64,000 nucleotides of DNA from NCBI RefSeq assembly GCF_000315625.1, contig NW_005434659.1:885848-949847 (forward strand). Reading direction: 5' to 3'. Both the position numbers and the translations under genes were made by a program. The notes below the pieces were generated by a model. The model did no database searches, was not told where the DNA came from, and saw only the letters and a program-made list of their open reading frames with translations. This DNA is from Guillardia theta CCMP2712 (taxonomy: Eukaryota > Protista > Cryptophyta). Of the stretch, positions 29,610 through 32,620 are shown one piece after another (position 1 is the stretch's first letter; every line of letters starts with the position of its first letter).

Positions 29610-29862
29610 CTTGATCTTCTCTTGATCTTCTCTTGATCTTCTCTTGATCTTCTCTTGATCTTCTCTTGATCTTCTCTTGATCTTCTCTTGATCTTCTCTT
29701 CTCTTGATCTTCTCTTGATCTTCTCTTGATCTTCTCTTCTCTTGATCTTCTCTTGATCTTCTCTTCTCTTGATCTTCTCTTGATCTTCTCTTGATCTTCT
29801 CTTGATCTTCTCTTGATCTTCTCTTGATCTTCTCTTGATCTTCTCTTGATCTTCTCTTCTCT
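29610..29862 (+). repeat. (CTTCTCTTGAT)n 11-mer minisatellite upstream of the rhodopsin gene
   Basis: About 21 units with occasional extra CTTCT. Confidence 0.95.
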
Positions 29863-29991
29863 CACCTCCTGACTTCAATCAGTTCCGTGCGGGTTTTTCG
29901 TTCGGCCTACACCTGTTGCACTCTACTACCCCTCCATTTGATATAATAATTTTGTCCAAGTGATGGGTGGGGTAGCAAGAAGGGAATTTTC

Positions 29992-32099
29992 ATGGCAGCT
30001 ACAGAAGGAGAGGGAGGGGGAGGGGCAAGAGGAAGAGGAGGAGAAGCGAGAGGCAGAGGAGGATGGAGAGGAAAGTGGAGTTTCAGACCATGCATGACGG
30101 CGAGTTTGATTTTGCTCGCCTCGCTGCATTTTGTGCAGAGTGAGTCGCATCGCGGTGGTGAGGATAATGGGCGGGGTGAAGGCGGGGTGAGGATGATGCC
30201 GCAAGAGGACGACGGGAACGATGATGGTTTCTTGCGATCCGTCAACACCTCGGTCATTGAAAACATCACCGTCGTGAACATCACCAATGTTGTCACCGAG
30301 TATGTTTCAAACCAGTCAACGAGCAACCTAGGGGAGGAGATCAACAGGTCACTCGAGGAGAGAAAACAAGAGCCGAGCTCCTCTGAACGTGTCCTTCAGG
30401 CTCATCTTTGCCATCAAACACCCGAGCTCCTTCTTTCAGCCCAGCGACATGGGTGCGGTGAAGGTTGTTGGTTGACAACCTGCTCACAACTATCTTGATA
30501 GACCCTCTGATAGTCAGAGTGCTCTGGTCCGGGTTTGTTCTCTTTCTCGTTGCATCGTTCATGATCGTGATTGACCGCCATCGGTACAAGATCAAGTACC
30601 AGGTCCTGTTCTCACTGTTGACGACTCTCTTCCCTCATGTGGACGACGCGGCAGGGTGATCACAACTTGCTGTTCTTGATGTTCATCACCACAACCCTCA
30701 CGTACATGACGATGGCCAACGGCCATGGTCGAGCTTACAAGTACGCCATCACAGGTGAGCTGGATATTTGAATCTCCCTCACGATGTTTCAATGCTCCTC
30801 TCAAGTTTTGGATCTTGGTCACCAAGTTGCATTCAATATTCCTGATGAGGTTGCTATGCAGAGGTGGACCCAAAGAATCTCACGCGAACATGTGTTGACA
30901 ACTCAACGAACGCGAGCTCAACGAATGTTGTTCCCCTTGCTCTTTGCTCTTGCTCTTGCTCTTGCTCTTTGCTCTTGCTCTTGCTCTTGCGCTTCCCCTT
31001 CCCCTTCCCCTTCCCCTTCCCCTTCCCCTTCCCCTTCCCCTTCCCCTTATCTGCGCGCATCTGGTTCTTCGAATTGAGCGTCTTCTTGCAATTGTAGACG
31101 ATCTTCAACACAGCTACAACTGGATCAAAGTTCGATTCTTGTCCTTCGGGAGACGTCAAGTACATTTGGATGTCAGCAGTGGCAAAGTTCGAGGTACAGG
31201 CGAGCAAGTAGCTTGCTACTCTCCTGATCCTCCTTTCAGATGGTCCCTTTCAATCCTCCCTTCTTCTATGCCAAATACGTGCAATGGATGATCTCTACCA
31301 ATATCACGCTCTACCTCCTCATCCGGTCAGTGGCCAAGGCGAACAAGAGAATCACCTTCCGTGTCATGGTAGCTCCTGCAGGAGGAGAGCTCGGGGCTGA
31401 GTCCCTCGCAGGCCTGCAACTCGCTGATGATTCTCAGCGGACTCTGTGCAGCCTCGATGAGGGTGGACGAGATCAGCACGCTGGATGTCCGCATGATCGT
31501 GAAGAGAAGGGAGCTGACGGGGCTGGCAGGCGCCGCGGTACATCACGTCTCGATGGATCTACTGGGTGTTTGGGATGATGTTCTACATCCTGCTGCTCAC
31601 AACCCTTAACAATGGCGTGCGATTGGCAGCAAACAGCCGGCAGACGCACGCAGAGAGGGGCAAGGTGTTCAATGAGGTGAGGGAGGGAGGAGGGCGAGCG
31701 GACGCGAATTGAACGCCCCACAGCTCTTCTTCATCATCTGTGTTGGGTGGTCCCTCTACCCGTTCGTCTGGGTCGTCACGGAGGGCGCTTACATCGTGAC
31801 CTTCACTACCAACGTCTACTCCTTCACTCTCCTCGATGTCGTGACCAAGTTCTCCTTCGCGGTGCAAGAGCAAGATTGCACTGTATGCTTGCTGAGTGAA
31901 CTGCAGGCTGTTTTCCTCATCCGGATACCGAAGAGGAAACATCAGAAGCTCCGTCATCCTGCGGTGAGTTTGCTGCACCTGCTGCAACCCACGTGACAAC
32001 CCAGGGCAGACTGAGAAGATTCAACAACTTCGCAACTTCTTCTCTAGGAGACATCATACCGCCGACAATGCCGATCCTCGAGATTCCTACAGAACATGA
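29992..32099 (+). CDS. Type-1 (microbial) rhodopsin with signal peptide, N-terminal ectodomain and enlarged B-C loop; 12 exons, about 426 aa from ATG 30094 (alternative in-frame ATG 29992)
   Basis: Exons 30094-30347, 30400-30452, 30502-30602, 30655-30754, 30862-30926, 31098-31193, 31240-31368, 31412-31462, 31530-31676, 31724-31861, 31907-31963, 32010-32099 are all GT-AG and sum to a multiple of 3. Helix B YMTMANGHG, helix C FYAKYVQWMISTN, helix D NSLMILSGL, helix E RWIYWVFG, helix F WSLYPFVWVVTEG, helix G LLDVVTKFSF (retinal Lys). Confidence 0.9.
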
Positions 32100-32620
32100 T
32101 GCACATGAAATTGAAGCAGTGAGATGTCGGTGTATAGACAGTCATCGTGTGTAAATATTCGTACATTTGTAAATGATTTGTTGTACCTTTGCACAAAGAA
32201 AGAACCATACAGAGAGTCGAGCACAACTGATTGTTCTGCATCACTTGTCCTCAGCGAGCCGTGCAACCTTCACTCTTCCAGTGCTTTCAACAGGGAACTA
32301 ACTTCCTTCAAGGAGTCACGCAGCCTGGCGCAGGGCTGGACTGGCACGGGTGCTCCATAATGGAGCGCATAGAGGTGGTAGCGATCTTCTTTCCCTTGCT
32401 GGCAGTGCTGGCAGCTGCATTCACGACATTGGCCGTATCTTCCATCCGTTGGATAACGTTCCTCTTGAAGGAATCGTCATTGAAGGCTGGCAGCAGAGGA
32501 GGCTGGGGCGTTCCCAGGAGCGATAGCTTGTCGAACATTGGAGGAGGAAAGAACTACACAGACTCGGTGTGAGAACAGGGATAGAGGGGATGAGCAGGAG
32601 CGGGAGCAGGAGAGGGAGAG

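What the first reader, a model, noticed from the sequence alone, without database searches (positions are those of the whole stretch)
30094..31260. The rhodopsin carries a signal peptide, a sequon-rich N-terminal ectodomain and a ~70-aa B-C loop with a Cys pair: a receptor-like extracellular face
Seen in sequence: hydrophobic signal MTASLILLASLHFVQS, then about 90 aa containing N-glycosylation sequons NTS, NIT, NIT and NQS before helix A. Between helices B and C the best splice path gives RAYKYAITEVDPKNLTRTCVDNSTNASSTN|TIFNTATTGSKFDSCPSGDVKYIWMSAVAKFE|MVPFNPP, with three more sequons (NLT, NST, NAS) and exactly two Cys. Established: the BR B-C loop is a short beta-hairpin, and both regions lie on the extracellular/luminal side. 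Inference: a disulfide-stapled glycosylated ectodomain could mediate oligomerisation, localisation or ligand/partner binding.
Basis: partly seen in the sequence, partly recalled or inferred. Interest (0 to 1): 0.7.

Follow-up and report, generated by a model that had tools for sequence, protein, structure and literature searches.

The report
Algal rhodopsin with enlarged sugar-site outer face
An expressed light-sensor (rhodopsin) gene of the alga Guillardia theta, recorded in public databases only as a truncated 5-helix fragment, really encodes a full 7-helix protein with an unusually long outward-facing tail and loop that carry many sugar-attachment sites and two cysteines; what that outer face does is unknown.

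Summary
Spliced transcript contigs from three studies give a 12-exon gene at window 30094-32099 (+). This is Guillardia theta GUITHDRAFT_151284.

The protein has 434 aa, or 468 aa from an in-frame upstream ATG at 29992. It is a complete 7-TM microbial rhodopsin. Its N-terminal tail is about 85 aa with 4 sequons. The B-C loop spans 68 aa between conserved anchors, against 11 in the bacteriorhodopsin alignment, and carries 3 sequons and 2 Cys.

- **Sequons:** 7 against 2.7 expected, P=0.006.
- **Cys pair:** not beyond chance, P=0.18.
- **Corrections:** The "signal peptide" is N-terminal only if ATG 30094 is used, and the mRNA holds three earlier ATGs.
- **Annotation:** the RefSeq model (263 aa) and the published alignment lack helices A-B and this whole face.

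The "receptor-like" reading is untested. I found no orthologue, no domain match and no confident fold, and the full-length fold was left out. I take it as a glycosylated extracellular cap, with low confidence. The scan had already noted a large glycosylated ectodomain on another G. theta rhodopsin (s1-434716). I found a third, lysine-less family with a folded, Cys-rich ectodomain.

The parts
29992..30093 (+). Possible 34-codon in-frame N-terminal extension (first ATG present in the X1 transcript contig). It also holds the start of a 26-codon uORF (ATG 30063, stop ends 30143) that overlaps ATG 30094.
30094..30141 (+). Hydrophobic leader MTASLILLASLHFVQS. Candidate cleavable signal peptide, with V at -3 and S at -1.
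   Evidence: Rule-based only; SignalP was not available.
30142..30347 (+). Rest of exon 1. Acidic, Gly-rich stretch, then an N/V/T-rich stretch with sequons N51 (30244), N57 (30262), N62 (30277) and N73 (30310).
30400..30452 (+). Codes the last part of the extracellular tail just before helix A.
   Evidence: joints 30344>30397 and 30451>30501
30502..30602 (+). Exon 3: helix A and the start of the cytoplasmic A-B loop.
30655..30754 (+). Exon 4: helix B, ending in the Y..M..G.G anchor (TYMTMANGHG), and the first residues of the B-C loop.
30862..30926 (+). Exon 5: first half of the loop insertion. Sequons N175, N183, N186; Cys180 (30891-30893).
   Evidence: contig coordinates and depth bins
30927..31097 (+). 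Intron 5 (171 nt, GT..AG), full of microsatellite repeats.
31098..31193 (+). Exon 6: second half of the loop insertion. Cys206 (31140-31142).
31240..31368 (+). Exon 7: MVPF, aligned to MVPF in the bacteriorhodopsin chains, then helix C with K235 at the R82 position and Q238 at the D85 position. Sequon N244 is in the membrane.
31412..32099 (+). Exons 8-12: helices D-G with D378 and the retinal lysine K382 (31847-31849), a basic C-tail, and stop TGA at 32097-32099.

Best explanation
The locus is GUITHDRAFT_151284 of Guillardia theta. It is an expressed, complete 7-TM retinal-binding microbial rhodopsin with a bacteriorhodopsin-like core. Its extracellular side has been enlarged in two places.

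1. A short hydrophobic leader sends an N-terminal tail of about 85 aa across the ER membrane. The tail is acidic and then N/S/T-rich, with four sequons.
2. Exons 5 and 6 encode exactly 54 residues, inserted just before the MVPF that aligns to bacteriorhodopsin's MVPF. This stretches the B-C loop to 68 residues between anchors. The insertion has three sequons and two Cys.

Most likely mechanism (inferred, not shown): both segments are N-glycosylated in the ER. Together they form a partly flexible, glycan-covered cap over the extracellular half of the protein. The cap would serve folding, stability, trafficking and perhaps the oligomer interface or the extracellular entrance. In known cryptophyte rhodopsin channels the N-terminus and this same loop (ECL1) do exactly that. 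The two loop Cys may staple the insertion or link protomers. I do not take it as a discrete ligand-binding domain.
For: **Shown**
- Exon structure, frame and expression.
- Identity with GUITHDRAFT_151284.
- Rhodopsin family membership: PF01036 at 77 bits for the stored model and 31 bits for exon 10 alone. Best solved relatives are haloarchaeal BR-type pigments at E=6e-18, with the helix-G lysine aligned.
- Helices A and B align with other cryptophyte rhodopsins.
- MVPF...FFYAKY aligns to bacteriorhodopsin's MVPFGGEQNPIYWARY. The extra residues therefore lie between the helix B anchor and that motif, and they coincide with exons 5+6.
- Topology fits the positive-inside rule.
- Sequon excess, P=0.0065 with segment composition kept. 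All seven lie at least 17 residues from a helix end.
- STT3 is present in the genome.

**Precedents read**
- GtACR1, from the same alga, has an N-terminal cap fixed by the C21-C219 disulfide plus a C6-C6 link between protomers. Loss of the intraprotomer disulfide slows channel closing (PMC6336409).
- In ChRmine, ECL1 and the N-terminus build the trimer contact and line the central pore (PMC9385719).
- ECL1 length has been proposed to bias oligomer type (PMC13739731).
Against: - No glycosylation, disulfide or oligomer data exist.
- No orthologue was found, so conservation of the Cys pair, the sequons or the insertion itself is unknown.
- The Cys pair is not beyond chance.
- The only fold that could be run, the stored fragment lacking helices A-B with a 7-sequence alignment, gave pLDDT below 50 for the loop half. 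Order and disorder are therefore both open.
- The start codon, and hence the nature of the leader, is unresolved.
- Function of the rhodopsin core is itself unknown: Q replaces the D85 counterion.
Confidence: 0.45

Rival explanations
1. The tail and the disulfide-stapled loop form a genuine receptor-like ectodomain that binds a ligand or partner protein, or positions the pigment in a specific membrane patch. The protein would then integrate light with a second input.
For: - The outer face is large, about 150 of 434 residues.
- Sequon enrichment suggests selection on this face.
- The loop has an even number of Cys.
- Other G. theta rhodopsins carry true folded ectodomains: the Gt_148137 family at pLDDT about 90 with 6 invariant Cys, and scan note s1-434716.
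Against: - No domain or look-alike for the tail or loop.
- No similarity to the Gt_148137 ectodomain or loop beyond shuffles.
- Low-complexity composition.
- Low-confidence fold of the loop half.
- No conservation data.
Confidence: 0.12
2. Neutral lineage-specific expansion. The tail and the two-exon insertion are tolerated, largely disordered additions in a fast-evolving orphan paralogue. Sequons and Cys are by-products of N/S/T-rich composition and have no specific role.
For: - No relative above about 30% identity covers this region in the protein libraries or metagenome contigs searched.
- Exon 1 and the loop exons have no other copy in the genome.
- Low-entropy stretches and FoldIndex near or below zero for residues 17-48 and 162-208.
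- The Cys count is at chance.
- The intron between the two loop exons is microsatellite-rich.
Against: - The sequon count exceeds what each segment's own composition gives (P=0.0065).
- The insertion is constitutively spliced in all three assemblies and keeps the frame. Skipping both exons (161 nt) would break it.
Confidence: 0.28
3. The leader is not a cleaved signal peptide. Translation starts at ATG 29992. The 34-aa basic extension stays in the cytoplasm and the hydrophobic stretch acts as an uncleaved signal anchor. This would be an extra 'TM0', giving an 8-TM topology as in enzyme rhodopsins. The tail would still be luminal.
For: - ATG 29992 is the first ATG in the longest transcript contig and is in frame.
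- ATG 30094 is preceded by three ATGs, two of them with A at -3, and is overlapped by a uORF.
- The extension has 7 K+R against 3 D+E.
Against: - The hydrophobic run is only about 10-13 residues. It did not pass a 17-residue hydropathy threshold that all seven helices passed. That is too short for a helix spanning the membrane.
- V-x-S at -3/-1 fits signal peptidase cleavage.
- The open frame over 29992-30093 may simply reflect purine-rich, T-poor sequence. A second frame is open there too.
Confidence: 0.15

Closest known systems
Bacteriorhodopsin-type archaeal rhodopsins (PDB 9jws/8xhw 'Bacteriorhodopsin-II-like protein', archaerhodopsins, BR)
   Same: Best sequence matches of helices C-G (E=6e-18 to 1e-9). 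The retinal lysine and the D212-equivalent Asp are present. MVPF...FYA[KR]Y at the end of the B-C hairpin aligns directly.
   Different: BR has 11 residues where this protein has 68 between the helix-B and helix-C anchors. BR has no N-terminal ectodomain or sequons. K replaces R82 and Q replaces the D85 proton acceptor, so this is not a BR-type pump.
GtACR1 (Guillardia theta anion channelrhodopsin 1, PDB 6EDQ)
   Same: Same organism. Its extracellular N-terminal segment forms a cap fixed by disulfides (C6-C6 between protomers, C21-C219 within one). The cap tunes channel closing (PMC6336409). It has a non-carboxylate residue at the D85 position (own knowledge).
   Different: The GtACR1 N-segment is short (about 25 aa) and its TM2-3 loop is an ordinary beta-hairpin. 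Its Cys sit in the N-segment and the F-G loop, not in the B-C loop. No sequence relationship beyond the family level was seen here.
ChRmine / cryptophyte pump-like cation channelrhodopsins
   Same: Cryptophyte rhodopsins with a BR-like core. A specially shaped ECL1 and the N-terminus make the trimer contacts and line a central pore (PMC9385719).
   Different: ChRmine's N-terminal region is 25 aa and its ECL1 is far shorter than here. No glycan or disulfide role is described in that paper. The DTD-type helix C of that group (own knowledge) is not present here.
Gt_148137 family (lysine-less 'Rh-noK' rhodopsin-like proteins of cryptophytes)
   Same: Nearest paralogue group in the own-genome search. 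It has a signal peptide, a large extracellular N-terminal region with sequons, and a long B-C loop of 43-47 aa.
   Different: Only 22-25% identity. It lacks the helix-G lysine. Its ectodomain is a conserved, confidently folded beta-sandwich with 6 invariant Cys. Its loop has no Cys or sequon. Neither region is detectably related to those of Gt_151284.
Chlorophyte channelrhodopsin N-domain (C1C2/ChR2)
   Same: An extracellular N-terminal domain of several tens of residues precedes helix A and takes part in dimerisation (own knowledge; not checked here).
   Different: That domain uses N-terminal Cys for inter-protomer disulfides. The tail here has no Cys at all.

Membership tests
Microbial (type-1) rhodopsin, Pfam PF01036 | Profile score above the curated cut-off | tested here: met
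   P0001 scores 77.1 bits against a cut-off of 24.6. Exon 10 alone scores 31.4 bits.
Microbial (type-1) rhodopsin, Pfam PF01036 | Seven transmembrane helices | tested here: met
   Hydropathy segments for helices A, B, D, E, F and G. Helix C comes from the alignment to solved rhodopsins. Helices A and B align with cryptophyte paralogues. The public 263-aa model has only C-G.
Microbial (type-1) rhodopsin, Pfam PF01036 | Schiff-base lysine in helix G | tested here: met
   K382 in LLDVVTKFSF is aligned to the lysine column of the solved BR-type chains.
BR-type outward proton pump | Carboxylate proton acceptor at D85 and Arg at R82 | tested here: not met
   FFYAKYVQW against iYWARYaDW: K at the R82 position and Q at the D85 position.
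Eukaryotic cleavable signal peptide | Hydrophobic core at the N-terminus, followed by small or neutral residues at -3 and -1 | tested here: inconclusive
   The core LILLASLHFV and V-Q-S are present. The start codon is ambiguous between 29992 and 30094. There is no basic n-region if the start is 30094. No SignalP-type predictor was available.
N-glycosylated membrane protein | N-x-S/T sequons in luminal segments at least 12-14 residues from the membrane, in an organism with oligosaccharyltransferase | tested here: met
   Seven sequons lie 17-55 residues from helix ends. STT3 scores 207 bits in the genome. Actual occupancy is not testable here.
Disulfide-stapled extracellular loop | Cys pair conserved in relatives or close in a confident structure | not testable with these tools
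   No orthologue covers the loop. The full-length fold needs the joined exons and was left out. The fragment fold was of low confidence.
Gt_148137-type (Rh-noK) ectodomain rhodopsins | Conserved Cys-rich N-terminal beta-sandwich and conserved 45-aa B-C loop | tested here: not met
   Profile of their ectodomain against this tail: -0.2 bits. Profile of their loop against this loop: 842 of 2000 shuffles score as well.
Channelrhodopsin-type N-domain dimer | N-terminal extracellular Cys for inter-protomer disulfides | tested here: not met
   No Cys in residues 1-179.

The most novel reading that the evidence does not exclude
The glycosylated tail and the Cys-stapled 68-residue ECL1 fold together into a real binding module. 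Gt_151284, a rhodopsin without a helix-C counterion, would then be a two-input receptor: light plus an extracellular ligand or partner. Alternatively, its photocycle or conductance would be gated from outside through the loop that runs straight into helix C.
Probability: 0.07. Interest if true: 0.8.

Novelty: new variant of a known kind. Interest (0 to 1): 0.35.

Why it matters
1. **Annotation.** The only public model of this gene is a 5-helix artefact. That is RefSeq XM_005837266, used for the cloning primers and the alignment in Konno et al. 2020. Anyone expressing it would get a non-functional fragment. The transcript-supported 12-exon model restores helices A-B and the whole outer face.

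2. **Structure.** A 68-residue, sequon-bearing ECL1 is far longer than the short beta-hairpins of solved microbial rhodopsins. It sits directly upstream of helix C, whose counterion position is already unusual. It is therefore a natural handle for asking how extracellular elements shape oligomerisation, gating or trafficking.

3. **Context.** Together with the Gt_148137 family and scan note s1-434716, it suggests that cryptophytes have repeatedly elaborated the extracellular side of rhodopsins. This pattern does not seem to have been described.

The functional claim itself remains speculation.

Tried and rejected
- **Orthologue hunt.**
  - An HMMER scan of 1.84 billion representatives with exon 10 found only the gene's own truncated model and one distant ORF.
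  - Three word-indexed searches of 5.8 billion proteins found nothing closer. These used the whole model, an alignment with the paralogue, and the loop plus helix C-D region at E up to 10.
  - JGI metagenome contigs gave only 27-29% hits.
  - The distant ORF led to locus L021, a Logan genomic contig. It encodes a relative with 42-52% identity in the matched helix D-G segments. The contig starts at helix D, so the loop is not covered.
- **Loop and tail homology with the Gt_148137 family.** A MAFFT alignment looked suggestive (G.K....P..D..Y). Profile scores were no better than shuffles, so this was rejected.
- **Internal duplication of the helix-B end as the origin of exon 6.** One PDB alignment placed VKYIWMS on a helix-B end. 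Protein and DNA self-alignments are at chance, P=0.83 and 0.44. Rejected.
- **Copies of exon 1 or of the loop exons elsewhere in the genome.** None found.
- **Pfam on every exon, and ESM-Atlas features on exon 1.** Nothing for the tail or loop.
- **AlphaFold2 on the stored fragment P0001:21-263.** The core was fine; the loop half was uninformative.
- Any search or fold with the joined 434-aa protein. It was only translated and analysed inside scripts.
- **Raw RNA reads (X17).** Too sparse on this gene, 36 reads, to show ends or minor isoforms.
Full report
**1. What is there**

The window is contig 15 of the Guillardia theta CCMP2712 assembly (G000:C15:885848-949847). A search of the representative protein library with exon 10 returned a 263-aa protein that is 100% identical over that exon (P0001). 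The larger library names it [quoted passage not shown], UniRef "Opsin". It is Gt_151284, one of the 42 rhodopsin-like genes of Konno et al. 2020 (PMC7714340).

**2. Gene model**

Eleven runs listed as probable RNA each hold 46% of the sampled words of the 2.1-kb stretch, which is about the exon share. I laid three of them (X1, X2, X5, from three studies) and one raw-read RNA run on window 29850-32350.

The three contigs are spliced identically, and all 11 introns are GT..AG. The twelve exons are:
- 30094 (or earlier)-30347
- 30400-30452
- 30502-30602
- 30655-30754
- 30862-30926
- 31098-31193
- 31240-31368
- 31412-31486
- 31530-31676
- 31724-31861
- 31907-31963
- 32010-32099

The joint between exons 5 and 6 was dropped from the joint table, because intron 5 is full of microsatellite. 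Two other observations fix exon 5 at 30862-30926 and exon 6 at 31098:
- The contig's own coordinates leave exactly 68 nt (3 ambiguous + 65) between 30751 and 31098.
- The depth bins stop at 30926 and restart at 31098.

Joining the exons inside a script gives an open 434-aa frame ending at TGA 32097-32099. No search or fold was run with it.

The RefSeq model is contradicted by the transcripts. It starts at ATG 30725 in a wrong frame and uses a donor at 30892/30893, so it lacks helices A and B. The published alignment holds this gene only from FFYAKY onward.

**3. The observation**

- Sequons: N51, N57, N62, N73 in the tail; N175, N183, N186 in the loop; N244 inside helix C.
- Cys: C180 and C206 are the only Cys of the loop, the tail has none, and three more lie in helices D and F.

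Two corrections are needed.
- **A missed exon.** A 53-nt exon 2 (30400-30452) lies between exon 1 and helix A. It contributes LIFAIKHPSSFFQPSDM.
- **The start codon.** The mRNA contains three ATGs upstream of 30094.
  - ATG 29992 is in frame and adds 34 G/R/E-rich residues.
  - ATG 30063 and ATG 30090 both have A at -3. They share a 26-codon uORF that ends at 30143 and so overlaps 30094.
  - The contigs start at 29976, 30014 and 30037, so all three include the uORF start.
  - ATG 30094 itself has T at -3.

The leader MTASLILLASLHFVQS is therefore certainly present in the reading frame, but it is not certainly the N-terminus. The open frame over 29992-30093 may only reflect purine-rich sequence, because another frame is open there too.

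**4. More than chance?**

| Test | Observed | Expected | P |
|---|---|---|---|
| Sequons in outer segments, whole-protein shuffle | 7 | 1.5 | 3e-4 |
| Tail, composition kept | 4 | 1.4 | 0.03 |
| Loop, composition kept | 3 | 1.25 | 0.10 |
| Both segments together, composition kept | 7 | 2.7 | 0.0065 |
| At least two of five Cys in the loop | 2 | - | 0.18 |

The sequon excess is real but modest. The Cys pair is not remarkable.

**5. Topology and anatomy**

- **Family.** The stored model scores 77 bits on PF01036. Its best solved relatives are BR-type archaeal pigments (E=6e-18). These align K382 with the Schiff-base lysine, K235 with R82 and Q238 with D85.
- **Helices A and B.** They align with cryptophyte paralogues, including the Y..M..G.G end of helix B.
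- **Position of the insertion.**
  - KFEMVPFNPPFFYAKY aligns to bacteriorhodopsin GLTMVPFGGEQNPIYWARY.
  - The extra residues therefore lie between the helix-B anchor and MVPF.
  - They coincide with exons 5+6 (161 nt), so skipping both would break the frame.
  - Between the anchors M-A-x-G-x-G and P-x-F-Y there are 68 residues here.
  - The Gt_148137 family has 43-47, and the bacteriorhodopsin alignment has 11.
- **Sidedness.**
  - K+R counts are 4, 4, 4 and 12 in the A-B, C-D and E-F loops and the C-tail.
  - They are 2 and 0 in the D-E and F-G loops.
  - The tail has net charge -8.
  - This fits the N-out topology of type-1 rhodopsins.
- **Glycosylation capacity.** All seven outer sequons lie 17-55 residues from a helix end. 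The genome encodes STT3.
- **Composition.**
  - Residues 17-48 are acidic and Gly-rich, with FoldIndex -0.44.
  - Residues 49-84 are N/V/T-rich with a small NITVV/NITNVV repeat.
  - Residues 182-200 are N/S/T-rich and low-entropy.
  - Residues 209-229 are ordinary.

**6. Relatives and conservation**

- No orthologue was found in any of the searches run.
- The nearest relative is a Logan genomic contig (L021). It shows 42-52% identity in the matched helix D-G segments and different intron positions, but it begins at helix D.
- In the own genome the best paralogue is Gt_148137 at 22-26% identity.
- Exon 1 and the loop exons are unique in the genome.

**7. Structure**

Only the stored fragment could be folded by reference. 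With a 7-sequence alignment the helices came out well. The loop half (TIFNT...MVPFNPP) had pLDDT below 50, with a tentative helix over VKYIWMSAVAKFE. This is uninformative, since helices A-B were missing and the alignment was shallow. Pfam and Atlas features find nothing in the tail or loop.

**8. Context**

Gt_148137 and its cryptophyte orthologues have the following features.
- They lack the helix-G lysine.
- They carry a signal peptide.
- They carry a conserved ectodomain with six invariant Cys and two conserved sequons.
- The ectodomain folds confidently as a beta-sandwich, with pLDDT about 90.
- It has weak Foldseek matches, including the GPR180 N-terminal domain.
- The family has a conserved 45-aa B-C loop.

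Neither region is detectably related to Gt_151284's. The scan also holds a note on another G. theta rhodopsin with a large glycosylated, Cys-containing ectodomain (s1-434716). Enlarged outer faces thus recur in this genome, apparently independently.

From the literature read:
- GtACR1's extracellular cap is fixed by disulfides and tunes channel closing (PMC6336409).
- ChRmine's ECL1 and N-terminus build the trimer pore (PMC9385719).
- ECL1 length has been linked to oligomer type (PMC13739731).

**9. Verdict**

The sequence-level observation is confirmed and sharpened. The functional reading is open. I favour a glycosylated, partly flexible extracellular cap that serves biogenesis, stability or the oligomer interface (0.45). 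The alternatives are neutral expansion (0.28) and a true binding ectodomain (0.12). A separate question is whether the leader is cleaved or acts as an anchor.

This is a new variant of a known kind. The most useful concrete product is the corrected full-length gene model.

Noticed in passing
L007:484-1935 (G000:C191:4660-6111), protein P0003 = GUITHDRAFT_148137, with orthologues P0004-P0016: A cryptophyte-wide family of rhodopsin-like 7-TM proteins without the retinal lysine. It carries a signal peptide and a conserved N-terminal ectodomain with 6 invariant Cys and 2 conserved sequons. AF2 folds residues 51-205 at pLDDT about 90 as a beta-sandwich with two helices. Foldseek gives weak hits to beta-sandwich domains, including the GPR180 N-terminal domain (9fow, E=1.5e-3).
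   Followed up: partly
window 30725-30893 and protein P0001: The RefSeq model of Gt_151284 starts at an internal ATG in the wrong frame and uses an unsupported donor at 30892/30893. This gives a 263-aa, 5-helix product. The cloning primers and the alignment of Konno et al. 2020 are based on it.
   Followed up: yes
This may mean translational control, or a longer N-terminus.
   Followed up: partly
window 31273-31284: Helix C has K at the R82 position and Q at the D85 counterion position, while D378 and K382 in helix G are kept. This is the subject of another note of the scan (s1-437004).
   Followed up: partly
L021:397-2341: A Logan genomic contig (SRR24908316, GC 45%) encodes the nearest relative of Gt_151284. 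Identity is 42-52% in the matched helix D-G segments. It lacks the two introns that split helix D in G. theta and has long introns elsewhere. The organism is unknown.
   Followed up: partly
window 29620-29860 and 30934-31050: Long microsatellites. A TCTTGATCTTC-type repeat array lies about 250 bp upstream of the gene. GCTCTT and CCCTTC repeats fill intron 5, between the two loop exons.
   Followed up: no
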